Part shown: one piece after another, positions 1,128 through 62,294 of the stretch
Numbering within the stretch: position 1 is the first letter of the stretch
How the letters are laid out: each line of letters opens with the position of its first letter
DNA from: Macrostomum lignano
Lineage: Eukaryota
Direction of reading: 5' to 3'
Assembly (NCBI GenBank): GCA_002269645.1
Contig: NIVC01000610.1
Coordinates: forward strand, 1 to 64,000
DNA length: 64,000 bases
Translations under genes and position numbers: made by a program
Notes under the pieces: generated by a model
Seen by the model: only the letters and a program-made list of their open reading frames with translations
What the model was told of the DNA's origin: nothing
The model's database searches: none

Positions 1128-4100
1128 CTAACTAGTGCGGCAGCTTCGTATCAGACCGGCTGCACCGTCGCAAGAGATGAAGGACGAGGCTGGGCCGATG
1201 GCAACAGTCGATGGCGGGACGCCAGCAGCCGGACCAGCCGAGGCTGAAGCGGCAACTGATGATGCGGTGGGCCCCAGCTTAGCCAAAGCAGACCGCCGTC
1301 TAGCCATGACAGCTAGCAACAGGCAGAGCGGTAAAGCCGCTGCAGCCAGAAGCAGAAAACGGTCTTTGTTGGGTGACGCTGCTCGAGATGATGTTGACAC
1401 AGAAGATCGGATGCTGCTAGGAATAAAACGAAACCAACGAAGCAGCAAAGAGCCTGCAAATGCAATTAAGTTAAACAAATAATTGGTAGAAATTGATTGC
1501 TATCATATACATAGAACTATAAAATAAAATTGAGTTTGCAATCAGCTTCCATACAGCATCATGCCTTAGTATTTTCTTGATTTCAAATTCATTTGGTCTG
1601 CGAATGCTTGATTAGGATAAAAAGCTCCGCATATGTATACATGTATGTATTAATGTTGTGTACTTTCTCAATCTCATTAATTAATCCGCTTTCCCTTTGC
1701 CTTTCTTGGCAACTCTTATCTAGTCCCTGACAGTCTTATATTCTCCCTGACAGGTCTCATCATATCGCTGACAGGTCTTATCTTGTCCCTGAAAGGTCTT
1801 ATCTTGTCCCTGACAGGTCTAATCTTATTCCTGACAGATCTTATCTTGTCCCTGACAGGTCTAATCTTATTCCTGACAGATCTTATCTTATCCCTGTCAG
1901 GTCTAATCTTATTCCTGACAGAACGTATCTAATCTCGGACAGATATTATCTTGTCCCTGAAAGATCTTATCTTGTCCCTGAAAGATCTTGTCTTATCTCT
2001 GACAGATCTTATCTGGTCCCTGACGGATCTTATCTTGTCTTTAACAAATCCATCTTGTCCCTGACAGGTTGTATCCGTCTCGTCTCTTGTCTAGACACAC
2101 CTAGCTTTCCGCCTACACGCTTAACATTGTCCTAACACACCAATATTGTCCCAACACACTAACTCCTGCCCATACACCCACAACCACATCAGCGCAACTC
2201 ACTCCGCAGTTTAGACAGCCAGCTCGCAGACTCGCTCCCGGAGTTGCCGGGACAAGGCCGGTCATCTGACGAGCCAACAGTGGGCGCAGCGGCGGCAGCC
2301 AGAGGACTGGACTGAGCGGCAACATCCTCATCATCAGCAGCAGCATCGGCCATATGCTCAATAGTAGAGAATGCTGTAGAATCCGATGCAGTCAGATTCA
2401 ATAGCAAATCGTTGCCCAGACTAGTTTCATACTGTTCAGCGTATCGCAAATCTAATCGAGCTGTCAATCTATCAGAGTCTGTCAGATCCGAGCCGCGATG
2501 TAAAACAGGATTATCCATCTGGCCAGATGCCTCCTCCAGCACAGCGGCCACTCGGCGAGTCTCGGCCGGGCCAACTGGCCGCTAAAGCTGTTATTATTGG
2601 AATTGCGACCCGCAGGCAGCAGAGCGGCAAACTGTTGCATTGGCAGGCGTTGCCAGGCAACCCGATCAACAGCATTAGTCGGTAGGCGGATTACGCTAGC
2701 CGAAACTGCGGCTGCTGCGTCGCCGAGGTCAACCTCGTCCGGGCCGAGGCACAGCACCACCAGCGACGGACTGCCCGACGCGGCAGCTCGAAGAACGCGC
2801 CGACATTCGGCGGCCGATTCGCGGGTAGCAACCAACGCCAGGCAACGGCAATTCCCTGGGAGCAGCTCGCCGCCGCTGCCACTCTGACTATCAATCGAGT
2901 CCCAAGCGGTGAGCGAGTAGCAACAGAGTCCGAGCTGCAGTCGCAGTCGCCTACTAAAGTAAGCGGCAAACTGAACAGCCAGCCAGTCGTCAGTGTCGCC
3001 AGAATAGTACAGCGAACTGGCCAATATAATATCGTAGCAAGCGGCCGGATCATAAGCCGATCTCGCTAACGGTCGATAGTCATCAATTGGAGTCCAAGTG
3101 ACGCGCAGAATACGCGCCAGGGCGCGCCAACCGGCGCTATCAGTATCTAGAATAGTTGAGCCGGCGCCTAACTGTAACAACGGATAGGCCAGAAAGTCAA
3201 CCTCCGCCGGGCTCAACAATCCGGCATCGGTGTCGCCGTCGCCAACGTCCAGATTGGTCACCAGATAGCGGCCGCTCCAGGCGGGCCGGCGGCTGACCAG
3301 GTGTACAAATAGGCGAGGTAAGAAAGCGCGGAACAATCTGACAGTGCTAGGAGTGACCAGGAACATGCAGTACTCAGCATCGGCTAGCGGGTCATCGGAG
3401 TCTTCATCGTCGCCATCTAGCCGACTGAGAAGCTGCTCAGCTGGCAGGCTCAGACAGCGGCAGGAGCGACGCTCGGCCTCCAACGCTAAACTGAGCCGTT
3501 GAACGAAGTCTTTCACCGAGCCAGCGGCCGCATCGCCCTCACTGAATAAGAGCCCGTCGGCGCTAACCAATGCCAGTTTGAAATCGCGCCGGCGGCCGTA
3601 ACAGCTGCCGGATTCGAACTCGCTGGCCAGCTGGCCGACGTTAACGCCGGCCAGGCTGTCGTCTGAGAAGGCGCCGCCTGACTGCGGGGAGTTTCGGCAT
3701 GGCGGGGAGTTGGGGTGATTTTTAATAATCCCAAAAGCGTTGCCCTGACGGAACTAAGAGCCTGTATAGGAGAATATTCCATAGGGGATAGGGACATGAT
3801 ACCCCTCATGGGATCTTTTGGGCGATTTGCTACTCTATACTCGTACTCTAAATAATCTTTGGGCGTATCTCCCACTCCCTACAGATTCCTACGGTACAAT
3901 CTGCCACTCCCTACAGGTTCCTACGGTACAATCTGCCACTCCCTACAGGTTCCTACGGTACAATCTGCCGCTCCCTACAGAATCCTACGGTACAATCTGC
4001 CGCTCCCTACAGAATCCTACGGCACAATCTCCCACTCCCTACAGAATCCTACGGTACAATCCCCCACTCCCTACAGAATCCTACGGCACAATCCTCCACT

Positions 4101-5111
4101 CCCTACAGATTCCTACGGCACAATCTGCCACTCCCTACAGAATCCTACGGTACGAGCTACAATCTACCACTCCCTACAGAATCCTACGGCACAATCTGCC
4201 ACTCCCTACAGAATCCTACGGCACAATCTGCCACTCCCTACAGAATCCTACGGTACGAGCTACAATCTACCACTCCCTACAGAATCCTACGGTACAATCT
4301 CCCACTCCTTACAGAATCCTACGGCACAATCTGCCACTCCCTACAGAATCCTACGGCACAATCTGCCACTCCCTACAGAATCCTACGGCACAATCTGCCC
4401 CAATCGAGCAGGTCTGCCACTCCTTAATTCCAGCAGAAAATAACATTTACCCCGGACAAATTCGTCTACAACCCGTCGGACGCGCCCGGATGCCGCCGAG
4501 TCGAACTCGTCGCCGGCGGCACCCAAGTCTTCAGGCGACTCGTTCAACATTAGGAAGATCGCCTTCCAGCACTCGGACTCCGCTAGCCAGATGGACTCAG
4601 CCTCGGACTCATCGAAGGTGTCGCCAGTCAAAGCTCGGAAAACAATCGGCTCTCGAGCCGAGGCCGCCTCGAAATCTAAGCCGTTAGTTAGGCCTTCAAA
4701 TTCTTCCATAGCAACAAAGATTAAACGCCGTCGGCAGCGTTGGCGACACCTGGCCCCACCGAGACCGGCCAGAAACTTTTTCAATGGTACTAGAGAGCGC
4801 GGACTGACTACTAACAGGCAGTAGTCAGATAGGGACAGCAAATTAGATAGATAAATTCCAACTTCGTTTTCATTCTCAGCTACTGAGGCGGAGGACACGG
4901 CTGCGGCAGCGACATCGAAGGCCGAACAGCTGGCAGGCAGCGGGCTGGCGCAGCCCAATAATTCATCGATTCGCCGTTTTAACAGGGCAGAAAATCGTTC
5001 AGCCAGACGGTCGGGCCTGGCCGGCACCACAGATTTCAAGGCTCGGCCATAGTCCGAGGGCGAGACCACGGTGAACCGGTGAGGCCTGGCCTGGCCGCTG
5101 TCCGCTGCCAT
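1128..5111 (-). CDS. Spliced gene, ~808 aa: three TIR-like (flavodoxin-fold, BCAP/Dof-like) domains, acidic linker, C-terminal TM helix. Exons (minus): 5111-4451, 3677-2610, 2574-2203, 1453-1128
   Basis: ORFs 4383..5111, 2482..3570, 2189..2551 and 1128..1478 join through phase-1 GT-AG introns: G|gtaaat...gtcag|GC, G|gtcgca...gccag|TT (35 nt), A|gtgagt...ttgcag|GC. Exon lengths 661+1068+372+326=2427 nt. Three units share a beta/alpha pattern with central strands SDYCLLVVSP / AEYCMFLVTP / NCRCLALVAT and terminal W helices (CWKAI / GWRAL / AWQRL). Hydrophobic stretch FLLLAAAALPLCLLLAVMA is followed by RRR. The TIR call is by eye only. Confidence 0.7.
1725..2070. repeat. 21-bp minisatellite (TCTTGTCCCTGACAGGTCTTA) in the last intron of the TIR-like gene
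   Basis: Tandem copies read directly. Confidence 0.9.
3873..4396. repeat. 32-bp minisatellite (CTACGGCACAATCTGCCACTCCCTACAGAATC) in intron 1 of the TIR-like gene
   Basis: Tandem copies; explains spurious ORFs 3818..4687 and 3859..4443. Confidence 0.95.
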
Positions 5112-13875: not shown

Positions 13876-14856
13876 TGACAGGCCTGACTGGACCACCCTA
13901 TCGGCTATCCTTAATATTGTGAAACACCTGGTCCAATTGAACATAAACAAAGAAACTAAAATTGGAATTTTGTCAAAATTTTGATTGACAAATTTGACAT
14001 CAAAATCAAATAGGCTCTACTGAATATGATACACCCACTTTATTATGTCCACTGTCCAGCCCAGTGCAATTAAGGTCTAGGGGGCCTATCGTGCAGAACT
14101 GTTTGTAAAAAAATTCACATTGTTGAAGTGATTATTCGCATTTAAGGAGTCCAAAAAAGCTTACTAAACTTAGCTTATTGTACTAGGCCTATATGTAACG
14201 TATCGTGCACTGTGCATGTGCGCAAGACAAGCATATAAAATAATTAATAAAAAAGGAACTATACACGTTACATACTAGGCCTATGATGAGCATTCTAGTC
14301 CACGCACAAGTACAGGCGTGTAAAAATAAAAAAATTATTACAAAATAAAGCAACCATAATAAAGAATAGGCGCCTGGTACGCCACACAAGTTCCATAACT
14401 TCCATATGCAAACAATGGGAGAAAGCGGCAAGTATTTTCTACTCCCATAAAGCAATTTTGGCCGTAAACTTTATTACAAGAAAAAGCTGTTTCAAAAAGA
14501 AACCGTAAAAATCAAGAAAAATGAAGGGAATAGAAATATATGTTTCTTGCAACCAAAATTTAGTTTTTAAATACATATTTGTCTTTTTAGGTCCAATTTG
14601 TCTACTATTTTGTTTCAATTCATGACGTTATTTCAAAAGCAGCATTAGCGGTATTCTGCACAAGAACCACAGTCGAGTCTATACACTTTAATAACCTTTC
14701 ATAATGCACTGTATTATGCTACTGTAATACTACTATACTTATTAAAGTGGTCCTTGATTCTGAAATTTCGAATGAAGCAGAGCATATTGTGCTGTGCTAC
14801 TTAGCTGAACTTCTTGAATCAAGTAAACTTGTAATAAAAATGGTGCATGCAGCTGG

Positions 14857-15394
14857 GGGTGCAGCCGAAATCGTCATATTCAAAATCGTCATATGATGAT
14901 GACGACTTGAACAAATCTCGAAGACTTAAACATTTAAATAAGACGACTTTGACCAAAGGCAAGGGTGTATATTAATTTTGGATTTTTCTACCTTCGGGCA
15001 AAAATCCCTTGCATATGCACCCGTAATTTTTATATTAACTGTGTCAATTAATGCTGATTCACCCCTGATTGCTGCATCAGCAATCAGGGTCGGCGTTGCG
15101 TTCGCGCGAATTAATCCGGAGAATAATTCAAATTTAGTTCAAATATCAATTAAGTGGCACCCGACTGCCACACATGACTACTGAGAATACACTGTAAATT
15201 GTTTTAATTTGTTGGCAAACAAGAACACGCTGCCGCCATGAGCTAAGATCCTTGCGCAGCCAATGCAACACAATATGACGATTTAGTGAATGCAGCATTG
15301 TCCAATACTGAGATGATGACGATTTAGATAATTTAGTTGTTTTTCTCGTAAGCCGCAGATGACGATCTCGAATATGACGACTTCGGCCGGAACC
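14857..15394. mobile_element. MITE (538 bp) with GG termini, ~35-bp TIR (GG.T.C.GCCGAA.TCGTCATATTC), 8-bp TSD GCAGCTGG; Merlin- or Mutator-like
   Basis: GCAGCTGG at 14849-14856 and 15395-15402; left GGGTGCAGCCGAAATCGTCATATTC vs right reverse complement GGTTCCGGCCGAAGTCGTCATATTC; internal ATGACGA repeats. Confidence 0.8.
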
Positions 15395-16650
15395 GCAGCT
15401 GGTAACTCTTAAGCAATTATGTTAAGCAATTATAATTCCATTTTAATGCAAATGCATACAACTTGGCATATGAAATAAAAAATAAAATGAAAATGATCCT
15501 TTCACTACTACACAGCTAACATGTACTGTATTTTGTACAGTTATTTACTCTATTGTAGATTATACTCGTACACATACAGCATAGTAACATGCTGTGCATG
15601 CTAAATTTTAAGAATGGTACTCTTCACTACCCCGGATGAAATTCAATAATTGATTATATGATGAAGACATTATTTGTTTCGATTGTCTTCGCAGTGTATT
15701 TTTCCACCAAATTGGCCTCCAAAATAACACATTTTTAGTTTGACGTACGTTCAGATACTACAGTGGTCCTTGATGAAATATTCTGAAAAATCTGAAAACT
15801 TTTGAACTCACTAATGATATAGCAGAATTTGCAATCGCACTTTGCTTTTTTTATTTCTCTAAATGGCGCTTTGCCCATTACCGTATAATCCAAAGCTTAT
15901 AGAGGATCGAGCTATAAGAAGTACTTTATAATTACGTACTTTTATCAAACGTTTCCGTGAAAGCATCAGAGACTCCTGCAAGAGAGATGCACAGACCAGC
16001 CCTTCTCTTTATTTTCCATGTTTAGTTTCCATGCGTGGGACATCCATTGCTATAGCCTATAGCGTAGGCTGAAACAGACAAAAGTTGACGGCTCAGAAAT
16101 CGCATTGACAATTTGCCCCGTTCCTCGCGTGGCTAGCAGTTTGCATCTGATGAATCGGGGCTAGAAGTTTTTTAAAAATTAATTTGCTGCTTCTCCCCTT
16201 ATAAAAAGTTGCAGTGTCTGAAACTGCATGAATGAGGGGCCATTGTTTCAAGCGAGCCCTCGTAACCTTGGTGCATTGTGGGAGTCAAATGGCTTTAAAA
16301 AGATGCTGGTCCATATGACGGCGATTGTTATTCTGCGAGCTTATTGGACAGGGATTTTCCTCCCCCCAGCTAGAGGAGACATCCCCAGCAACAGAGCTGC
16401 CACTGCTGGCTATAGCAAACGCGATGACGACAACCGCCTGTGCAGCCGCATGGGATGGGTGCCGTGTGGTCAAAGAGAGGTTGGGCAGTGGTGTCGGGGA
16501 ACAGGCCAGCTAAATTCAGTCTTTCCCTCCTCTAATAAATATCGGCTAGCTCAAGCAGCAATTTCCAGCTTCGATTTGCGATCATCAATAGAGTGTTAGC
16601 TAGAGCTGCTTCATCAAGACTCACTATCAGCATTGTTGCATTGCACGGCA

Positions 16651-17819
16651 ATGGCCGACAAAGCTCGGACAGTTAAGAAGCCTGGCGCTCCCGCCGCTGT
16701 CACCAACGGCAAGGCTAAGCCGGCTAAAGCGTCTGACAACAAGCAGCAGCAGCCGAAAGCTTCGTCTACCGGAAATGGAACGACCGGAAACGATGAAGAG
16801 ATAAATGGCGCCATAACTGACATGCTGGCTAAACACGAGCTCGAACTGCTAGCGGTCGCGTCCGATCTCACAGCGGAGACGAGTCACTATGACAAAGAGT
16901 TGCGCAATCTCAAAGAGAAGCTCGAAGCGGCCAACAGGCGCCTGATGCAGCTGGAGTGGCGCTTTCCAACTACGGCCCTGTGGCGAATCGGTGACTTCTT
17001 GGAGCGCATGAAGGAGGCCAAGAAAAACAAATCCGTACTGGAGAGTCCGCAGTACTATCTGAGCAGGCAGGGCTATCTAATGAGCATGTCTATCGCACTG
17101 TATGGCTCTGGAGAAGGTGAGAAATTTGTTTTACTATTCAATTAGTTTAGTTATGTGATTATCAAGAACACCTATAAAGTGTAGATGAATTGTTATAAGT
17201 TCAAGTGTAATAGTAAACGCACCTCCAAAATCCATAATTGTCGTCGTATGCATAATCAGCACAAACCAAACGCATCGCTCAACTGCAGGAAAAGTACATT
17301 TAGAACTTTTAAATTGAAAGAAACAAACGAAACAAATTGACAGAAAATTGATAATAACAAAATTTGGGTGATGGGGATTAGTAGGATGATATGAATAAAG
17401 CGATATAAAGTTTCAAAGTGTACGATACGACTAGTTGGATGTCACTAAATTGTTGACCTGCTGACCGCCCCCCAGCCCGCGGAAAGTACATGTCGATATT
17501 CGTGAGCGTGTGCAGAGGCGAATTCGACGGCAACCTGGCCTGGCCGTTCACCATGCGGCTGTACCTCAGCATCCTGGACCAGACCGAGGACGAATCGCCG
17601 AGGCGCAACCTCACCAAGATGATCATCCCTCGGGTGTGCCGGGAGAACCTGGCCTTCCTCGGCCGACCCAGAGGCCGGCCCAGGAATCCGCAATTCGGCC
17701 TGGAGCAGTTCGTCAGCCTGGAAGACGTTCTGCGCAACAGCGACGAGCGACAGTACGTGCGCAACGATGCCTTGTTTGTACGGCTGGAGGTGCCCAATGA
17801 GGACCTGGTGCCGATGTGA
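16651..17819 (+). CDS. TRAF-family protein (269 aa): low-complexity N-terminus, coiled coil, MATH/TRAF-C domain; no RING or zinc fingers. Exons 16651-17116, 17476-17819
   Basis: G|gtgaga...cccag|CC phase-1 intron gives LWRIGDF...ESPQYY...GYLMSMSIALYGSGEARGKYMSIFVSVCRGEFDGNLAWPF...LSILDQ...FGLEQFVSLE...YVRNDALFVRLEV, the canonical TRAF-C motif series. An extra upstream exon cannot be excluded. Confidence 0.92.
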
Positions 17820-17857
17820 GTCATCTCTGCAGCGCCTGCCAGCCAACTGGGTGACTC

Positions 17858-17922
17858 GTGACCAGTGACCAGTGACCAGTGACCAGTGATCAGTGACCAG
17901 TGACCAGTGACCAGTGACCAGT
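17858..17922. repeat. 7-bp repeat (GTGACCA)n just 3' of the TRAF stop
   Basis: Direct reading. Confidence 0.9.
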
Positions 17923-18544
17923 GCAGCTGCAAGCGAGTAGAGATAAAAATTAGACGATGTTAAAGTTTGAGACCGGTTCTTATGCCATTATGCACTGGCT
18001 AGGTAGGAGGTTTTCAGTTTTTTTTCAGTAAATCCACAATACGTCGCCTTCTAAAATTATTTACTCAACATTTTTTGGTCAACTTTTTCCCGAAAAAAAT
18101 CTGCGAATTTAGCTCTTGTAAAAAACACGTACGCTTGCTTCATTTGTATATTCAGAAATTTATAGAAGGCTAGAGATGTTAGGAATTTAGTGCTAAAAAA
18201 ACTGAGAACCAGGCAACTTTACTAACTTTACTAATTTTACTAAGCAATACCTGTGAATAATTTCTGTTTTTTTACTGCTGCATCTTTTTGCGCAAATTCG
18301 ATAATGTAATCTCTTTCCTTCTGTGATCCCAGGTTTTGCAAACCAGTTCACCAAAGCTTTTTTCTACTTCAATGTAAAATTGCTGGTTTTGGATATTAAA
18401 CGGGTTAAATTTTAATGTTTGAGAAGTTCTCAGTCCCCTGCGAAAGCTTGTTTTCTGAAAAATTGTCATGCTTCCGCTTTGCGTGTTAATTTTTTTTGAA
18501 AACTTCAGAATTATTAGAGTTCAGTAAGGAACTTTTATTAAAAG

Positions 18545-21265: not shown

Positions 21266-34051
<12,786 letters not shown>

Positions 34052-41842: not shown

Positions 41843-42660
41843 CAAGCTTCACAATCCCCAAGCTTCACAATCCCAAGCTTCACAATCCCCGAGATTCACA
41901 ATCCCCAAGCTTCACAATCCCCAAGCTTCACAATCCCCAAGCTCACAATCCCTAAGCTCACAATCCCCAAGCTTCACAATCTCCAAGCTTCACAATCCTC
42001 AAGCTTCACAATCCCCAAGCTCACAATCCCCAAGCTTCACAATCCCCAAGCTTCACAATCCCCAAATCTTCACAACCCCAAGCTTCACAATCCCCAAGCT
42101 TCACAATCCCCAAATCTTCACAATCCCCAAGCTTCACAATCCCCAAGCTTCACAATCCCCAAATCTTCACAATCCCCAAGATTCACAATCCCCAAGCTTC
42201 ACAATCCCCAAATCTTCACAATCCCCAAGCTTCACAATCCCCAAGCTTCACAATCCCCAAATCTTCACAATCCCCAAGCTTCACAATCCCCAAGCTTCAC
42301 AATCCCCAAATCTTCACAATCCCCAAGCTTCACAATCACCAAGCTTCACAATCACCAAGCTTCACAATCCCCAAATCTTCACAATCCCCAAGCTTCACAA
42401 TCACCAAGCTTCACAATCCTCAAGCTTCACAATCCCCAAGCTTCTCAATCCCCAAGCTTCACAATCCCCAAATCTTCACAATCCCCAAGCTTCACAATCC
42501 CCAAATCTTCACAATCCCCAAGCTTCACAATCCCCAAGCTTCACAATCCCCAAATCTTCACAATCCCCAAGCTTCACAATCCCCAAATCTTCACAATCCC
42601 CAAGCTTCACAATCCCCAAGCTTCACAATCCACAATCAATGATTCACAATTGATTCACAA
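41843..42660 (+). repeat. 16-bp satellite (CCCCAAGCTTCACAAT), array 1
   Basis: Direct reading. Confidence 0.95.
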
Positions 42661-45927: not shown

Positions 45928-47181
45928 AGCGACTGAACATAGTCTGTGTACATAACAAGTGTACATTGTGTGTCCATTTTCTGAGTACTTCGGGTGTGTC
46001 ATAAGTAATGTCACTGCAGGCCTCTGTCTAAAATATGTAGGCACATGGACTTGTGGGTAGTGTAGCTGCAAAGTATACTTAGTGAAGCAATAGCAGTGCA
46101 TTTGAGACGTGCATAGGTTGTTTATGGCCCAAGTTATCGCAAGAATACGCCAAGCAGATTTAGCAAGTGCAACGCGATGAAAAATCGTCTATGCAGCGAA
46201 CAAAAATCATCATGAATCTTGACAAGACGCCTGCACCAAGCAGATCCGCAAGGTGTTTAGCAGCCGGGGCTTGAATGACATCCTAAACTGCCTGGTTGCT
46301 GAGGATGAAAGCTGGCTCCACCTGGATGGCAAGGGCAGCAAGGCAGATAATCGCTGCTGGTTGGGAGCTGGGGACTTCAGGCCGATGGTGACTAGGAAGT
46401 CCATCTCGGACAAGAAGACCATGCTGCTGGTAGCCTTCACGCCAAACAAACGAGTCTCCATCTGCACAACTCCACCGAACACCAAGGTCGATGGCCAGTA
46501 CTTTATCGACTTTTTCCGGCACACTGGAGACCTCTGGTGCACTCTCCGGTCAAATCCATGTCACCTGGACAAGGTTCTGTGGCAGATGGACACCGCACGG
46601 CTGCACACCTGAAGGCTGTTTCGAATTTTCTGCCTGCATGGCGAGTGAATCTGCTCTGACAGTCCCTACAGCCCAGACTTCAACTTTTGCAAGAGATTCC
46701 TGTTCAAATGGCTGAAGGCTGACTTTTCCAAGAAGAGTTTCGCAAACCATGAAGAGGTAAAACAGGCTGCGTTGCACTGGTTATGGCAGTTGGAGGAAAA
46801 ACACCTGCAGGCTGAGGTGGACAAGCTGTATGAGCACTGCCAGAGGGTGATTAATATTGGGGGACTCTATGTTGTTGAGTGGTACAGTTTTGTTCATCTG
46901 CGATTGCAAGTTCGTCTGTTTTCACATCAGTGACATTACTTATGACACACCCGAAGTACATAAACAATGTACATAGGTCATGCATGAACTAATACAAAGC
47001 TCCCAGCTTCCAGATACACACAGCTTCCTTACCTGCTCCAGATGGCGATGCAGCTGCTCCTGACTGGGGCACAGCAAGCCGCAACTGGGGCAGGGGCACA
47101 TGTCCAGCGGCTGGAACTCGCCTCCGCTAAGGCTGTTTTCGGCAATCTCGTCATTTTCGGAGCCGAACTTTTGCTGCTGGA

Positions 47182-47213
<32 letters not shown>

Positions 47214-50200
47214 GACACGGGAGTCCCGATGCCGTGCTTGTTCAGTCGGTGAACCCGCAGGAAGTACTTGTTGCACACCTCCTTGCCACAGACGTCGCAA
47301 CGGATCCTCTGCTGCGCCGGCGACCCGCCGGCTGGTCGAGTCGCCAACGATGACGAAGGCGATGCAATGGCGACGCTGGCGCTGGTCGGCGACGAGGTCG
47401 GAGATGCTGGAGGAGGTTTTGAAGATGCCAATATGAGCTTATCTATTGATGCTCAGAGCACTGACTGCTCAGACTCACAGCTTATCTATTGATGCTCAGA
47501 GCACTGACTGCTCAGACTCACAGCTTATCTATTGATGCTCAGAGCACTGACTGCTCAGACTCACAGCTTATCTATTGATGCTCAGAGCACTGACTGCTCA
47601 GACTCACAGCTTATCTATTGATGCTCAGAGCACTGACTGCTCAGACTCACAGCTTATCTATTGATGCTCAGAGCACTGACTGCTCAGACTCACAGCTTAT
47701 CTATTGATGCTCAGAGCACTGACTGCTCAGACTCACAGCTTATCTATTGATGCTCAGAGCACTGACTGCTCAGACTCACAGCTTATCTATTGATGCTCAG
47801 AGCACTGACTGCTCAGACTCACAGCTTATCTATTGATGCTCAGAGCACTGACTGCTCAGACTCACAGCTTCTATTCATTAGTTCCCCGAGGCCCCAGCAA
47901 TCTACACGCGAAAATTTTCCCATTCGAAGGCCAGGTTTTGTCAAAAGGCAACTGAGTCTTTCGAGTCGACAAGCAGAGCTTGGCTGCAATTTCTGCAGCA
48001 ATTATATAATAACTTCAGTAGAAAGAGACAAAAACAGGCCTTAAATTGATACTCTTGTGCTCGATGCGGCTTCTGTTGTCTTTTCCTAACAAACTCCCTT
48101 CGGCGCTGGGGACGCAAAAGTTTTTTTGGAAATTCCATCTCATTGCCAAGAAGGAATTTCTTTTAATCTATGCTGCTTGGGAGTTCAATGCTTTGGAGAA
48201 TGAAAGAGAAAACTTTATTAGAAGATGAAAAACTCATGGCCCATCAATCCTCGGGTTTTTGCATCCTAAAACTCACCAAGCCTCTGTTCTTTGTTCGCCT
48301 CTTTGACTTCTCCTTCATTCCCTCCTTTTTTGACTGCAGGATCTTCTGCTTCAAGTGAAAGAAAGCGGACAGACAGGGGGTTGGGGGAGGAAGAACAGAA
48401 GCCAGGGGAGGTATTCCGAATTTCACTCAATAGCAACATCGCAACTTTCATTTCGTGTCCTCAAAGAAAAGAAGGCAGGGTCGGGTGAGAGAGCTGCCAG
48501 GCAAGCAGGGCCTCCTCGCCTTTCACCCCACCCCACCCCCATCATTCACGTTTGAAACCGGACAGGGAATAAAGCAAAGGGACAAACAAAAAAAGTAAAT
48601 TTTTTATGATTGAAATTCCCCGAGTCACGTCTGTCTCCGGCTAAGAACAAAAAATGATGAGGAAGGGAGGCAGCTGGGACCAGGGTTTTCAAGGCTGAAT
48701 GGACTCACGAAAAACTTTCAGTCGGAAGTCCGTCCGCCCCGCCTACCCGGGGGGGGGGTGAATTTGTCTAAAAACTGGCTTTGTCTTAAACTCTGCTATT
48801 ATCTACCAGACCTGGGAGACCCCGGAGTCCATGAGGGGCCCGAGACGCGTGCAGGTCTCTCAAAATTACAAGCGCACAACTGAATAAACAGATGCTCCTT
48901 GAATATTTATAAATCCCCCACCCCTAAATTATTGATTGATTCTCTCATCAGTCAAACCTGTTTCACCTCTCACACTTACCCCTTTCTCTTCTCACTCTCC
49001 CCTGCCTCTTCTCACTCTCACCCTGTCTCCTCTCACTCTCACCCTGTCTCCTCTCACTCTCATCCCTGCCTCTTCTCACTCTCACCCTGTCTCCTCTCAC
49101 TCTCACCCTGTCTCCTCTCACTCTCACCCTGTCCCCTCTCACTCTCATCCCTGTCTCCTCTCACTCTCACCCTGTCTCCTCTCACTCTCACCCTGTCTCC
49201 TCTCACTCTCACCCTGTCTCCTCTCACTCTCACCCTGTCCCCTCTCAATCTCATCCCTGTCCCCTCTCAATCTCATCCCTGTCTCCTCTCACTCTCACCC
49301 CTGCCTCCTCTCACTCTCACCCCTGCCTCTTCTCACTCTCCCCCCTGTCACCCCTCACTCTCCCCCTGCCTCTTTTCACTCTCACCTCTGTCACTTATCA
49401 CTCTCACCCCTGTCACCTATCACTCTCATCCCAGTCACCTATCATTCTCACCCCAGTCACCTATCACTCTCACCCTGTCTCCTCTCACACTCACCCCTGT
49501 CTCCTCTCACTCCCACCCCTCTTCACCCTCTCGCTTCTACATTCAATGTTTACCTCTGGCCGGCACTCATTCCCTCCTCGCGCGCTGTTTCAGAATTATA
49601 AACCGAGAGTTTTTCAAAAGTCAAAAAAACACAAAAGCCCTTTGGCTGACGATGTTGGCAAGCGCAGTCCTCTTTGTCCCCAGCCTCCCGTGCAGCTTTC
49701 GCTTGTCAGAAAGAAAGCGAAATTATAGCTTCTTTTATGAATGTTTTGCCTGGCGATGAGTAGCCTAAACTTTCTTGCTCTCAATTCAGTGTTTCTGCTC
49801 AGTTTTTGTCGTATTGAGTGAAGCCAGACAACTGACATGGTCAGTCAGCTATTGCCTGCCTGCCTGCCTGCCTGCCAAAACAGCCAGTTGCAGTTCAACA
49901 AAAAGAAACTCAGCACGAAATAGAAAAAAAACTGGATGCAATTTTTCTGGCTCAAAAACTGCAGCAGCACTGCGATTTGCTTCAGTTAGCCCAGACCGGG
50001 AGACAGTCGCTAAGTGGCGCGTGTTAATAGGAAATTCAAGATCCCAACCCTCCATCTTGCCCCCCCCCCTATTCCCAGTAGGCATAAACATGACAATTCT
50101 GCTAGATAAGTCTTGTGTAAGATGTTCATGCCTCACAGAAATTTGTTTCTGCTCAACTGCTTTTCAATATAATTGTCAATGGAGTCTGCCCCCCCCCTCC

Positions 50201-52578
50201 TAGAAGAAGAAGACTGCAGCGGAGAGAAACAGGTGCGAGAAAATTTTATCGCGATTAAAAATTGAGAGCGCAGCTGATGAAAATAACTTTTTTGTGCTCT
50301 GCCGACAACTCTTTCATCTCATTATGTCTTTTGAAGGCCTTCCCGGTGCCGCAGGCTTCCACATTTCAGCTTCGATATCCCTTGTTGCCACCCTCAGCTG
50401 TGCCGCTCTTTAACTTCCCCAACCATCTTGAGACTGAGATAAAAGCATTTCTACCCACCCCAAAAGGCAGAGAACAGGAGGTAGCTACTTCACAAACTAG
50501 ACACTTCAGAATTGGGGATTGTGAAGCTTGGGGATTGTGAAGCTTGGAGATTGTGAAGCTTGGGGATTGTGAAGCTTGGGGATTGTGAAGCTTGGGGATT
50601 TTGAAGCTTGGGGATTGTGAAGCTTGGGGATTGTGAAGCTTGGGGATTGTGAAGCTTGGGGATTGTGAAGCTTGGGGATTGTGAAGCTTGGGGATTGTGA
50701 AGCTTGGATATTGTGAAGCTTGGGGATTGTGAAGCTTGGGGATTGTGAAGCTTGGGGATTGTGAAGCTTTGGGATTGTGAAGCTTGGGGATTGTGAAGCT
50801 TGGGGATTGTGAAGCTTGGGGATTGTGAAGCTTGGGGATTGTGAAGCTTGGGGATTGTGAAGCTTGGGGATTGTGAAGCTTGGGGATTGTGAAGCTTGGG
50901 GATTGTGAAGCTTGGGGATTGTGAAGCTTGGGGATTGTGAAGCTTGGGGATTGTGAAGCTTGGGGATTGTGAAGCTTGGATATTGTGAAGCTTGGGGATT
51001 GTGAAGCTTGGGGATTGTGAAGCTTGGGGATTGTGAAGCTTTGGGATTGTGAAGCTTGGGGATTGTGAAGCTTGGGGATTGTGAAGCTTGGGGATTGTGA
51101 AGCTTGGGGATTGTGAAGCTTGGGGATTGTGAAGCTTGGGGATTGTGAAGCTTGGGGATTGTGAAGCTTGGGGATTGTGAAGCTTGGGGATTGAGAAGCT
51201 TGGGGATTGTGAAGCTTGGGGATTGTGAAGCTTGGGGATTGTGACGCTTGGGGATTGTGAAGCTTTGGGATTGTGAAGCTTGGGGATTGTGAAGCTTGGG
51301 GATTGTGAAGCTTGGGGATTGTGAAGCTTGGTGATTGTGCATTGGGGATAGCGAAACGTCCCCAAATTTTCGAAATGATTCGAGAAAGCCTCGTACAAAA
51401 TGACTTTCTCACCATCCGGCGTCTCAAAAGCGCCCCCGTGCTGACGGAAATTTGCCGAGTTGCCAGTTGCCATGGCAACGCGCTGCCCGTTAGAGTTACC
51501 GACTCCATGCGACGATTGAGCCTGCGGCTGTGGCGGCTGCACAGACTTGGGCACGCCGTGGACTTTCTCCTTGTGCGTCCGCAGGAAATACTTGTTGCAG
51601 ACCTCTTTGCGGCAGATGTCGCACACGACTCTGTCTGCCAGCTTGGCGGCCACCATCGAGGACTGGAATGCGTCGAGCTGGTGCTGGTGATGCGGCTGGT
51701 ACGCCGGCGGCTGCTGGTGCTCCATCGAATCCAAGCTGGCCGACGACTGCGGCTGAGGCGGCGGCAGCGGCAGCGGCAGCGAGGCCTGAGTTGGCGGGGG
51801 TGGCGGTGGCGGCGGTGGCGGCGGTGGCGGTGGTTGCTGTGCAGTGGCAGCGGCCAGCTGCGCATAGGGGCCCATCAGCGCCGGGCCCAGAGCCAGCGGA
51901 AACGATCCCAACAGAAAGGGATTTAATCCCATAGCGGCTAGCAGAGGATTGGACACTGCAGCTAGAGATGACAGGTCCTGATGGTGATGATGCTGCGGAG
52001 CCTGCTGATGCTGAATGTAGTGCTGCTGCTGCTGCTGATGCTGCTGCTGCCGCTTGTGCCTCTGCTGACTGGTCTCGCCGCCCCTGCCAGCAGAGCCTGC
52101 GGAGCCGGCAGGCCCAGTATGAATGCCATGCACGTCCGCTTTGTGCTTTCTCAGGTAGTACTTGTTGCAGAAGAGTTTCTCGCAGTGCTCGCAGTAGCTG
52201 TCCGGCCGGGTGCCGACGTCCTGCACGGCCTGAGAGTCGGTGGAGCGGTCGACAGGTTCGTTGACTCGGCTTGGCTTTGCCTGCTTCCTGCGAGCTGCTG
52301 CGGCGGCGGCGGCGGCGGCGGCTGCTGCAGCAGTGCTTTGAGTTGTTGGCATGGTGACCGGCAAGTCGACGCAATCGTCATCGGCGTCTCCGTTGTCACC
52401 GTAGTTGTTTGCGGATTCCGCAGAAGCGGCGGCGGCTGCGGCGGCGGCGGCGGCGGCGGCGGCGGCCGCCAGCTGCTTCCCAGTGGCGGCCTGCTGGCGG
52501 CCGGAGCCGAGGCCGAGGGGCAGCTGCGGCAGCTGGCCGCCATAGCTGGCCATGGCGCTGGCGGCTTTGAGATACCAG

Positions 52579-52621
<43 letters not shown>

Positions 52622-52646
52622 TAGACTGCTGCAGGTGCTGATGCAT
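45216..52646 (-). CDS. C2H2 zinc-finger protein (~653 aa from the Met at 52646) with poly-Q/A/P tracts and four dispersed fingers. Exons (minus): 52646-51413, 47406-47033, 45569-45216; the 5' end may extend (acceptor at 52664)
   Basis: Fingers CEHCEKLFCNKYYLRKHKADVH, CDICRKEVCNKYFLRTHKEKVH, CDVCGKEVCNKYFLRVHRLNKH and CPSCGLLCPSQEQLHRHLEQ|SH. Junctions G|gtgaga...ctccag|CA (phase 1) and CAG|gtaagg...ttgcag|TCG (phase 0). Confidence 0.87.
45630..45925. repeat. ~22-bp repeat (ACATAGCGGCTGTACATTTTGT) plus (GT)n in the ZF gene intron
   Basis: Direct reading. Confidence 0.85.
45988..46956 (+). mobile_element. Internally deleted mariner (969 bp) with perfect 29-bp TIRs and TA TSD, antisense within the ZF gene intron
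   Basis: TA|CTTCGGGTGTGTCATAAGTAATGTCACTG...CAGTGACATTACTTATGACACACCCGAAG|TA. Confidence 0.95.
46220..46885 (+). pseudogene. Mariner transposase remnant (catalytic domain only; stops and frameshifts; HTH region missing)
   Basis: LNCLVAEDESWLH (cf. RIVTGDEKW), WQMDTARLHT* (cf. HDNARPH), SPYSPDFNFCKRFLFKWLK (cf. PYSPDLAPSDYHLF), KLYEHCQRVINIGGLYV (cf. KLPERWQKCI...GDY). Confidence 0.9.
47438..47875. repeat. 43-bp perfect minisatellite x10 (CAGCTTATCTATTGATGCTCAGAGCACTGACTGCTCAGACTCA)
   Basis: Direct reading. Confidence 0.97.
48960..49525. repeat. 21-bp CT-rich repeat (CTCTCACTCTCACCCTGTCTC)
   Basis: Direct reading. Confidence 0.9.
50512..51340 (-). repeat. 16-bp satellite (CCCCAAGCTTCACAAT on minus), array 2, at the 5' end of a ZF intron
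   Basis: Plus strand reads (GTGAAGCTTGGGGATT)n. Confidence 0.97.
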
Positions 52647-61054: not shown

Positions 61055-61855
61055 TCCCCAAGCTTCACAATCCCCAATTCACAATCCCCAATTCACAATC
61101 CCCAATTCCCCACCCCTAAGTTTCACAATCCCCAATTCACAATCCCCAATTCCCCACCCCCAAGTTGCACAATCTCCAAGCTTCACAATCCCCAATTCCC
61201 CACCCCTAAGTTTCACAATCCCCAATTCACAATCCCCAATTCCCCACCCCTAAGTTTCACAATCCCCAATTCACAATCCCTAATTCCCCACCCCCAAGTT
61301 GCACAATCTCCAAGCTTCACAATCCCCAATTCCCCACCCCTAAGTTTCACAATCCCCAATTCACAATCCCCAATTCCCCACCCCTAAGTTTCACAATCCC
61401 CAATTCACAATCCCTAATTCCCCACCCCCAAGTTGCACAATCTCCAAGCTTCACAATCCCCAATTCCCCACCCCTAAGTTTCACAATCCCCAATTCACAA
61501 TCCCCAATTCCCCACCCCCAAGTTTCACAATCCCCAAGCTTCACAATCCCCAAGCTTCACAATCCCCAAGCTTCATAATCCCTAAGCTTCACAATCCCCA
61601 AGCTTCACAATCCCCAAGCTTCACAATCCCCAAGCTTCACAATCCCCAAGCTTCACAATCCCCAAGCTTCACGATCCACAAGCTTCACAATCCCCAAGCT
61701 TCACATTCCCCAAGCTTCATAATCCCTAAGCTTCACAATCCCCAAGCTTCACAATCCCCAAGCTTCACAATCCCCAAGCTTCACAATCCCCAAGCTTCAC
61801 AATCCCGAAGCTTCACAATCCCCAGGCTTCAGAATCCCTAAGCTTCACAATCCCC
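61055..61855 (+). repeat. 16-bp satellite (CCCCAAGCTTCACAAT), array 3, with a derived composite variant in its 5' half
   Basis: Direct reading; variant units CCCCAATTCCCCACCCCTAAGTTTCACAAT. Confidence 0.95.
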
Positions 61856-62294
61856 ATCGGTGTCGTTCAGAATCGGTATCGTTATTATCGTCGTAAAAAT
61901 AGGGCAGCGACAATAACACGCAAAGCTGTGCAGATGAAGTTAAAAACTGACTGTAGGCGTTTAATAGTGGCAATCAGTCGGTTCAACTGTACTTTTGGAA
62001 AGCTATTTTCCCTGACTCATCGAGTCCTTTGTGTGCTCGCTTCTTTTCTGTAAATTGTGATTGCAACGGCTGGGTTAGAAATTATTCACCGAAAGACACT
62101 GACTTCTCGAAGTTCGATACTGACTTTTGCAGAATCTTTGTCTGGCTACTGGGTGATGAAGCAACTCATTTACCAATATCGAATTCATTTTTCTTACTTA
62201 AATACAATACAATCTTTTTAAAGTATCTTCTAGCTAGTGGCATATTTTAGTGACTGTATGATTCTTTAGGCTGGGCTCTCAATGCCTAGTGAGG

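What the first reader, a model, noticed from the sequence alone, without database searches (positions are those of the whole stretch)
1128..5111. Hidden 4-exon gene: three TIR-like domains plus a C-terminal membrane anchor (orientation reversed relative to TLRs)
Seen in sequence: four separate ORFs join in frame through phase-matched introns into ~808 aa. The protein has three ~150-aa beta/alpha units (core strands DYCLLVVSP, EYCMFLVTP, RCLALVAT; W-containing last helix), an acidic linker with Tyr motifs (YAEQYETSL), then one hydrophobic helix FLLLAAAALPLCLLLAVMA flanked by KDR/RRR and a 57-aa tail. Established: BCAP/BANK1/Dof carry a divergent N-terminal TIR with a similar D-I-L-I...W...RC-V-V-L-L-S...V-V-L-L-C-G pattern but are soluble; TLR/IL-1R place the TIR C-terminal to the TM; MAVS is the model for a C-terminally anchored signalling adaptor. 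Inference: this may be an undescribed membrane-tethered multi-TIR adaptor or sensor. Only unit 3 has a Glu (RESAAEC) near where TIR NADases keep their catalytic Glu.
Basis: partly seen in the sequence, partly recalled or inferred. Interest (0 to 1): 0.78.

Follow-up and report, generated by a model that had tools for sequence, protein, structure and literature searches.

The report
Flatworm gene with three TIR-like domains
This is a damaged copy of an already annotated but uncharacterised Macrostomum lignano gene whose protein has three repeated alpha/beta domains that look most like TIR signalling domains, plus a C-terminal membrane helix; it is mildly interesting because flatworms have no Toll-like receptors, but the TIR link rests on predicted structure alone.

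Summary
The ORFs are real and coding, on the minus strand at 5111..1128. The window is Macrostomum lignano DNA, 98-99% identical to two loci of assembly GCA_002269645.1.

The gene is not hidden. GenBank lists it as hypothetical protein PAA63119.1 (831 aa). It has three exons, not four.

The window copy carries a 26-nt deletion at the end of exon 1 and a 1-nt deletion in exon 2. With reference splice sites this copy encodes 233 aa.

The three ~155-aa units are true repeats. A 33%-identical paralogue, PAA64332.1, shows this (unit-to-unit E 1e-13 to 1e-41).

A scan of 1.84 billion proteins found the family only in M. lignano. No unit gives a TIR-related match in Pfam, PADLOC or NCBIfam, and PDB sequence searches found nothing.

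AlphaFold models (pLDDT 77 and 89) give a five-stranded beta/alpha fold. For the better model the top four PDB neighbours are TIR domains (MyD88, IL-1RAcP, TLR5; TM 0.53-0.63). Ras-like folds score almost as well, and hhalign against TIR or BCAP profiles is not significant.

One strong hydrophobic helix is present, followed by 58 residues. No catalytic Glu is conserved.

Verdict: a lineage-specific, probably non-enzymatic, membrane-tethered TIR-like scaffold. TIR membership is unproven.

The parts
4451..5111 (-). Exon 1. ATG at 5111, donor GT at 4450-4449. Encodes repeat unit 1 (about 5081-4521).
   Evidence: 98.6% identical to residues 1-218 of A0A1I8HRW8.
4457..4459 (-). Site of a 26-nt deletion relative to both reference loci, which carry TGAGACGCGCAGCGTCTCACCCGATG here. 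It changes the exon 1 donor from phase 0 to phase 1 and removes ETRSVSPDV. The deleted segment contains a 7-bp inverted repeat and has TG microhomology at both ends.
   Evidence: alignment of the window with L001 and L002.
3682..4450 (-). Intron 1. The reference acceptor AG is at 3683-3682. Contains a 32-nt tandem repeat, 16 copies, at 3867-4399.
2203..3681 (-). Exon 2, a single exon in the intact copies. Encodes unit 2 (3588-3082), unit 3 (3042-2605) and the acidic, disordered-looking linker that includes YAEQYETSL (2443-2417).
2577..2578 (-). 1-nt deletion in a C run (reference GGCCCAG, window GGCCAG). It shifts the frame and leads to the stop at 2482. This was mistaken for an intron.
1454..2202 (-). 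Intron 2. Donor GTGAGT at 2202, acceptor AG at 1455-1454. Contains a 21-nt tandem repeat, 17 copies, at 1714-2069.
1128..1453 (-). Exon 3 (phase 1). Holds the hydrophobic helix at 1358-1302, then RRR and a 57-aa tail in the window copy (58 aa in the intact copies; the window has a 3-nt in-frame deletion). Stop TAG at 1130-1128.

Best explanation
The region is one copy of a three-exon gene found so far only in Macrostomum lignano.

Intact copies encode an 831-aa protein with these parts, in order:
- Three tandem, mutually homologous ~155-aa alpha/beta domains. Each has five strands in beta-alpha order.
- A ~160-aa acidic linker of low complexity.
- One hydrophobic helix, followed by a 58-aa tail.

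Shown here: the gene structure, the repeat relationship, the restriction to M. lignano in the databases searched, and the predicted fold.

Inferred: the domains are highly divergent TIR-type (STIR-like) modules. No acidic residue is conserved at any position across the six units, so they most likely act as non-catalytic interaction or oligomerisation modules. The large N-terminal part has no signal peptide, so it would be cytosolic and held on a membrane by the C-terminal helix.

The gene lies directly upstream of the canonical casein kinase II beta gene. Fused gene models exist, so the two genes are probably transcribed as one precursor.

The window copy carries two frame-breaking deletions. 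It is either a decaying redundant copy in this hidden polyploid, or it is partly mis-assembled.
For: Gene identity and structure:
- Species and existing annotation.
- The three-exon CDS rebuilt from L001 equals PAA63119.1 exactly.
- The GenBank models of this assembly derive from RNA-seq-guided transcripts (PMC5730564).

Repeats:
- Within the paralogue: B_u1 to B_u2 E 8.5e-41, B_u2 to B_u3 1e-21, B_u1 to B_u3 6e-13.
- Each unit of the window-type protein matches its positional counterpart in the paralogue at 1e-9 to 2.5e-31.

Fold:
- AlphaFold2 on only six unit sequences gives pLDDT 77.4 / pTM 0.78 and pLDDT 88.6 / pTM 0.86, with a b-a-b-a-b-a-b-a-b-a order.
- Foldseek on the better model: ranks 1-4 are MyD88, IL-1RAcPb and TLR5 TIR domains (E 6e-4 to 1.4e-3; TM 0.53-0.63). 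17 of the top 50 hits are TIRs.
- Read by eye from the sequence: each unit has a box-1-like start ([FY]-x-hydrophobic run-S..YS..D) and a box-3-like W-x-x-L-x-x-x-L last helix (alignment A3).

Membrane helix:
- One segment with KD 2.68 and no N-terminal hydrophobic segment.

CK2beta linkage:
- CK2beta lies downstream of both paralogue groups.
- Fused models A0A1I8HRW8 and A0A1I8HX14 exist.

Damage in the window copy:
-.
Against: - No TIR, TIR_2, TIR_3 or SEFIR hit for any unit or for either full-length protein, even at E up to 10. There are no PADLOC or NCBIfam hits.
- No PDB sequence hit with a single sequence or with the profile.
- Foldseek E-values are only about 1e-3. Ras-family G domains reach TM around 0.5 in the same lists.
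- The BB-loop (box 2) motif is absent.
- The paralogue has no clear transmembrane segment (KD maximum 1.6), so membrane anchoring is not a family-wide feature.
- Positive charges are denser after the helix than before it (RRR against KDR). This does not fit the proposed N-in topology well.
- Substitutions among copies run 7 non-synonymous to 5 or 4 synonymous, and three of the four copies compared carry frameshifts (window, L002, PAA85030.1). Constraint on recent copies is weak.
- There are no expression, localisation or functional data.
Confidence: 0.5

Rival explanations
1. The three units are a lineage-specific flavodoxin-like alpha/beta domain with no evolutionary link to TIR. The resemblance is generic to three-layer alpha/beta/alpha sandwiches. 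The protein then does something unrelated to TIR-type signalling, for example ligand binding or a structural role.
For: Foldseek lists mix TIRs with Ras and Arf GTPases, flavodoxin-like oxidoreductases, B12-binding domains, type II dehydroquinase and a GDSL esterase, at similar E-values and TM 0.4-0.55. There is no profile-level similarity to any TIR family.
Against: For the high-confidence model the four best PDB hits, and 17 of the top 50, are TIRs. These have the highest target-normalised TM scores (0.57-0.63, against about 0.5 for Ras). The units lack a P-loop or any cofactor-binding motif. Box-1-like and box-3-like motifs sit in the expected places.
Confidence: 0.35
2. The window copy is a pseudogene or null allele, one redundant duplicate in the hidden-polyploid M. 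lignano genome. It makes at most a 233-aa product (unit 1 only) or a 613-aa product. Whatever the family does, this locus does not do it.
For: Both reference loci agree against the window at the 26-nt and 1-nt deletions. Predicted products are 233 aa or 613 aa. Other copies carry their own frameshifts: L002 has two 1-nt deletions in exon 1, and PAA85030.1 switches frame near residue 438. The assembly has about 180 Mb of duplicated blocks at 95% identity or more (PMC5730564).
Against: The 1-nt changes lie in C or G homopolymer runs, which is typical of long-read consensus errors. Apart from the indels the CDS has only 12 substitutions in about 2.5 kb. The alternative acceptor at 3662 would restore the frame after the 26-nt deletion.
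Confidence: 0.55
3. The units are active TIR-type NAD+ hydrolases, giving a membrane-bound enzyme with three catalytic domains.
For: TIR-like predicted fold. Unit 3 has Glu residues after strand C (RESAAEC, window 2823-2803).
Against: No acidic residue is conserved at any column across the six units. Units 1 and 2 of this protein have Pro or Arg at the start of helix C, roughly where TIR NADases carry their catalytic Glu; this positional comparison was made by eye from alignment A3, not by a structural alignment. There is no match to SARM1-type or bacterial TIR HMMs.
Confidence: 0.05

Closest known systems
TIR domains of MyD88, IL-1RAcP and TLR1/5/10 (Pfam PF01582, STIR clan)
   Same: Domain size of about 150 aa. 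Five beta-alpha units in the same order. These are the best Foldseek PDB neighbours of the pLDDT 88.6 model (TM 0.53-0.63). The sequence has a box-1-like start and a W-containing last helix.
   Different: No HMM or hhalign support. No BB-loop motif. Three domains in tandem. The domains are N-terminal to the membrane helix rather than C-terminal to it. No LRR, Ig or death domain.
BCAP/BANK1/Dof N-terminal TIR (PF18567, PDB 5FOR)
   Same: Local pattern over strand C, helix C and strand D: RCVVVLLSAELV...LLP.L...R..R...CGV..SE..DF against EYCLIVVSEESV...FLPRL...R..RF..CVG...SEVDFL. This was the best of the single-sequence hhalign comparisons (P 0.005).
   Different: No PF18567 hit. The score drops to P 0.039 against a 20-sequence BCAP profile. 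5FOR is not among the top 50 Foldseek hits. No DBB domain or ankyrin repeats. BCAP is soluble and has a single TIR.
MAVS-type tail-anchored signalling adaptors
   Same: A cytosolic N-terminal interaction module with a single helix near the C-terminus.
   Different: 58 residues follow the helix, against fewer than about 30 in classical tail-anchored proteins. No CARD. The paralogue lacks a clear transmembrane segment.
M. lignano paralogue PAA64332.1 / PAA77530.1 (BOX15_Mlig018063g1, Mlig030938g1)
   Same: Same three-unit N-terminal architecture, 33% identity (E 7e-47). It also lies upstream of a CK2beta gene. It shares the C-terminal RYLLL...AKL...AGVP motifs.
   Different: Intronless. Its linker is Thr-rich followed by a long EQERQK repeat. 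It has no convincing transmembrane helix. Its CK2beta neighbour is a divergent paralogue, 53-67% identical to the canonical one.

Membership tests
TIR domain superfamily (PF01582 TIR, PF13676 TIR_2, PF08357 SEFIR) | Significant match to a family profile HMM | tested here: not met
   No TIR-family hit at E up to 10 for the ORF pieces, the full proteins or any unit scanned. The only hits were chance-level CH_2 and LytTR. PADLOC and NCBIfam gave nothing.
TIR domain superfamily (PF01582 TIR, PF13676 TIR_2, PF08357 SEFIR) | Alpha/beta domain of about 140-160 aa with five beta-alpha units (bA-aA through bE-aE) | tested here: met
   AlphaFold2 models of two units: pLDDT 77.4 and 88.6, DSSP order E-H-E-H-E-H-E-H-E-H. 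This is predicted, not solved. Strand order could not be read because no coordinates were available.
TIR domain superfamily (PF01582 TIR, PF13676 TIR_2, PF08357 SEFIR) | Solved TIR structures are the clearly closest structural neighbours | tested here: inconclusive
   Model 2: ranks 1-4 are TIRs and 17 of the top 50 are TIRs, but E is about 1e-3, TM is 0.53-0.63, and Ras family hits reach TM about 0.5. Model 1 gives a mixed flavodoxin-like, Ras and TIR list.
TIR domain superfamily (PF01582 TIR, PF13676 TIR_2, PF08357 SEFIR) | Conserved boxes 1, 2 (BB loop) and 3 | tested here: inconclusive
   Box-1-like and box-3-like patterns are visible by eye in alignment A3. There is no RDxxPG-type box 2.
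TIR NADases (SARM1, plant and bacterial TIRs) | Conserved catalytic Glu in helix C | tested here: not met
   No invariant acidic column across the six units. The only invariant residues are one Phe and one Leu.
BCAP/BANK1/Dof family | PF18567 TIR_3 followed by a DBB domain and ankyrin repeats | tested here: not met
   No Pfam hits at all. hhalign P 0.005 against 5FOR and P 0.039 against the profile, with probability below 7%.
TLR / IL-1R receptors | Signal peptide and LRR or Ig ectodomain, then a transmembrane helix, then a C-terminal TIR | tested here: not met
   No N-terminal hydrophobic segment and no LRR or Ig hits. The domains precede the helix. TLRs have been reported absent from M. lignano (PMC8609888).
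Tail-anchored proteins (MAVS-like) | A single transmembrane helix within about 30 residues of the C-terminus | tested here: not met
   The helix spans residues 755-773 of 831, so 58 residues follow it.

The most novel reading that the evidence does not exclude
Macrostomum evolved its own family of membrane-tethered adaptors with three TIR domains each. The topology is the reverse of TLR and IL-1R receptors. These would be highly divergent TIRs that assemble signalling platforms, and would supply TIR-based innate immune or stress signalling in a phylum that has lost Toll-like receptors. They may be co-expressed with CK2beta from one transcription unit.
Probability: 0.12. Interest if true: 0.75.

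Novelty: new variant of a known kind. Interest (0 to 1): 0.42.

Why it matters
Platyhelminthes, M. lignano included, have no Toll-like receptors (PMC8609888), and how they start innate immune signalling is an open question.

A flatworm-specific protein with three TIR-type domains on a membrane anchor would be a candidate for an alternative TIR scaffold. It would also be an unusual architecture: tandem TIRs placed N-terminal to the membrane helix.

More modestly, the work defines a new orphan domain family. It has two paralogue groups and no Pfam model. It folds confidently, can be tested in a tractable transgenic model, and lies next to CK2beta genes.

For genome annotation, the result shows that two frame-breaking indels in a near-identical duplicate were read as introns.

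Tried and rejected
- Enumerating GT/GC..AG pairs to find the proposed exon 2/3 intron. Many frame-restoring pairs exist, but none is needed, because the reference loci show a 1-nt indel instead.
- Pfam on ORF pieces, full proteins and units, and PADLOC and NCBIfam on units: no TIR-related hit.
- PDB sequence search with the protein and with the six-unit profile: nothing.
- Profile search of the 5.8-billion-protein set with the unit alignment. It returned nothing, not even the source proteins, so the search was wasted, probably through candidate pre-selection.
- The BCAP hypothesis. 5FOR was retrieved, 26 BCAP relatives were collected, all close and at least 70% identical over the aligned region, and a profile was built from 20 sequences. 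hhalign did not improve. Rejected as established homology; kept only as a weak lead.
- Foldseek against viral BFVD: only generic flavodoxin-like hits.
- Direct Smith-Waterman comparison of the units within the window protein. It was weak (z 0.7-2.5). The repeats became significant only through the paralogue.
- CK2 consensus sites in the linker: not enriched.
- Literature search for the locus tags and accessions: no papers.
- The look-up of encoding contigs for A0A1I8HRW8: not on record.
- Chance ORFs or non-coding sequence: rejected because of the conserved paralogue and the confident fold.
Full report
**Observation.**
These ORFs sit in GC-rich islands (about 56% in window 2001-4000) within AT-rich, repeat-laden DNA. 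The two long gaps between them hold tandem repeats: a 32-nt unit at 3867-4399 and a 21-nt unit at 1714-2069.

**Identity.**
A provisional spliced model found a single cluster among 5.8 billion proteins. It is Macrostomum lignano A0A1I8HRW8 at 93% identity, where the shortfall comes from my provisional junctions. tblastn of that protein against the window gives 98.4-99.5% identity per block.

The cluster holds five M. lignano entries:
- PAA63119.1, 831 aa, hypothetical protein BOX15_Mlig023861g1.
- PAA79909.1, 697 aa.
- PAA85030.1, 545 aa.
- Two UniProt models fused to casein kinase II beta.

So the gene is not hidden. It is annotated but uncharacterised. The loci of two of these proteins in GCA_002269645.1 (L001 and L002) are 98-99% identical to the window at the nucleotide level.

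**Gene structure.**
I rebuilt the CDS from L001 with three exons. In window coordinates these are ATG 5111 to donor 4450, acceptor 3681 to donor 2202, and acceptor 1453 to stop 1128. The rebuilt CDS translates exactly to PAA63119.1. The GenBank annotation of this assembly comes from a genome-guided RNA-seq transcriptome (PMC5730564), so the inclusion of the last exon rests on transcripts.

Alignment of the window with both loci shows two window-specific lesions:
- A 26-nt deletion at the end of exon 1. The reference reads GAATT[TGAGACGCGCAGCGTCTCACCCGATG]TGTCCGGG|GT. The deletion changes the donor from phase 0 to phase 1.
- A 1-nt deletion in a C run, GGCCCAG to GGCCAG at 2578-2577.

It closes the second by positing an intron, although both reference copies read straight through that point.

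As assembled, the window copy yields 233 aa with reference splicing. With the alternative acceptor it yields 613 aa, ending at the stop at 2482.

Other copies are also damaged. L002 has two 1-nt deletions in exon 1, and PAA85030.1 changes frame near residue 438. The single-base changes lie in homopolymer runs and could be consensus errors. The 26-nt deletion is flanked by TG microhomology and removes a small hairpin, so it looks like a real variant. I cannot decide between these without reads.

Against L001, substitutions in the CDS are 7 non-synonymous to 5 synonymous for the window, and 7 to 4 for L002. This suggests weak recent constraint, though the numbers are small.

**Family.**
A full HMMER scan of 1.84 billion representative proteins with PAA63119.1 found only its own cluster and one other protein, PAA64332.1 of M. 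lignano (E 6.9e-47, 33% identity). PAA77530.1 is in the same cluster as that protein. No relative outside this species was detected.

The paralogue makes the repeat structure clear. Its three units match one another at E 8.5e-41, 1.1e-21 and 5.8e-13. Each unit of the window-type protein matches the unit in the same position of the paralogue at 2.5e-31, 2.8e-24 and 1.0e-9. The triple arrangement therefore predates the duplication. Direct comparison of the three units within the window protein alone was weak (z 0.7-2.5).

**Fold.**
No unit and neither full-length protein hits a TIR-related Pfam family at E up to 10. There are no PADLOC or NCBIfam hits and no PDB sequence hits, whether with one sequence or with the profile.

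AlphaFold2 with a six-sequence alignment of the units gave two models:
- Unit 2 of the window-type protein: pLDDT 77.4, pTM 0.78.
- Unit 2 of the paralogue: pLDDT 88.6, pTM 0.86.

Both have five beta-alpha units in order.

Foldseek against the PDB gave these results:
It included a GDSL esterase, a flavodoxin-like oxidoreductase, K-Ras and Arf proteins, the FprA flavodoxin domain, TLR5 and TLR1 TIRs, TIR-STING, SARM1 and a SEFIR domain.
- The better model put TIR domains at ranks 1-4: two MyD88 entries, IL-1RAcPb and TLR5 (E 6e-4 to 1.4e-3, TM 0.53-0.63). TIRs made up 17 of the top 50 hits, including PdTIR, TLR10, IL-1RAPL2, TLR1, TRAM, BtTir and TIR-STING. Ras-family G domains were interleaved at TM around 0.5.
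- The viral library gave only generic flavodoxin-like hits.

The units have no P-loop. By eye they carry a box-1-like start and a W-x-x-L last helix, but no BB-loop motif.

- I recovered the 5FOR sequence.
- hhalign of the six-unit profile against it gave P 0.005, probability 6.8%, over strand C, helix C and strand D.
- Against a 20-sequence BCAP profile the result weakened to P 0.039.

My conclusion is that a flavodoxin-type fold is supported. TIR is the best structural match, but not decisively, and membership at the sequence level fails.

**Other parts of the protein.**
- Residues 755-773 are the only strongly hydrophobic segment (KD 2.68, reached by 8 of 1000 shuffles). The N-terminus has no signal-like segment. 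58 residues follow the helix, so this is not a classical tail anchor.
- Charges are KDR before the helix and RRR after it. This fits an N-in topology poorly.
- The paralogue has homologous C-terminal motifs (RYLLL..., AKL, AGVP) but no convincing transmembrane segment (KD maximum 1.6).
- The linker, including YAEQYETSL, is not conserved in the paralogue. CK2 consensus sites are not enriched in it.
- No acidic residue is conserved across the units, so NADase activity is unlikely.

**Context.**
In L001 and L002 the canonical CK2beta gene starts about 1.2 kb downstream on the same strand. That position falls just outside the window, and the window gives no CK2beta tblastn hit.

The paralogue is also followed by a CK2beta gene, a divergent one at 53-67% identity. 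Two UniProt models splice the last codons of this gene onto CK2beta. This fits the roughly 7% of M. lignano transcripts that are multi-gene precursors (PMC5730564). The pair was evidently duplicated as a block and has stayed linked.

**Interpretation and score.**
The most likely reading is a lineage-specific, non-catalytic scaffold with three TIR-like domains, membrane-tethered in this paralogue group. The copy in the window is broken or mis-assembled. My rough probabilities are:
- TIR homology: about 0.5.
- Membrane anchoring of the intact protein: about 0.7.
- The oligomerising-adaptor mechanism: about 0.3.

TLRs are absent from flatworms (PMC8609888), so a real TIR scaffold here would be of interest. 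Against that, the evidence is only predicted structure, the gene is already annotated, and the four-exon model was an artefact. I score interest at 0.42.

Noticed in passing
L001 15221-24036; L002 5910-7341; L003 13724-15165 (outside the window, beyond coordinate 1): Both paralogue groups of the three-unit gene lie directly upstream of a CK2beta gene on the same strand. The copy next to the window-type gene is the canonical CK2beta. The copy next to the paralogue is a divergent one, 53-67% identical. Two UniProt models fuse the upstream gene to CK2beta, which suggests one transcription unit.
   Followed up: partly
window 22654-29644: A 7-kb purine-rich satellite: 18-nt unit GAGAGGCAGAGAAGTAGA, about 383 copies. 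It accounts for the extreme GC and AT skew at 22-30 kb.
   Followed up: no
window 41843-42635, 50512-51339, 61055-61856: The same 16-nt minisatellite (CAAGCTTCACAATCCC) occurs three times. The middle array is in reverse-complement orientation (TTGGGGATTGTGAAGC). It creates long spurious ORFs such as 50490-52646.
   Followed up: no
window 14574-18203; L001 2271-8285 and 20388-24036: A block of about 3.6 kb upstream of the gene is present twice in L001 at 99% identity, on both sides of the gene and CK2beta pair. It may be a segmental duplication or a mobile element. An ORF at 16633-17145 (+) has a weak MATH-domain hit (E 0.002).
   Followed up: no
window 46940-47431 (-): An ORF with a weak C2H2 zinc-finger hit (E 3e-4). 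It may be an exon of a neighbouring gene.
   Followed up: no
window 3818-4687 (+) and 3859-4443 (+): Long plus-strand ORFs of 289 and 194 aa. They are artefacts of the 32-nt tandem repeat in intron 1, not genes.
   Followed up: yes
window 1128-1133: The fused UniProt models use a GT donor that overlaps the last sense codon, one base before the stop (ACTA|GTTAG), to splice onto CK2beta. It is a cryptic cis-splice site, probably used on unprocessed precursor RNA.
   Followed up: partly
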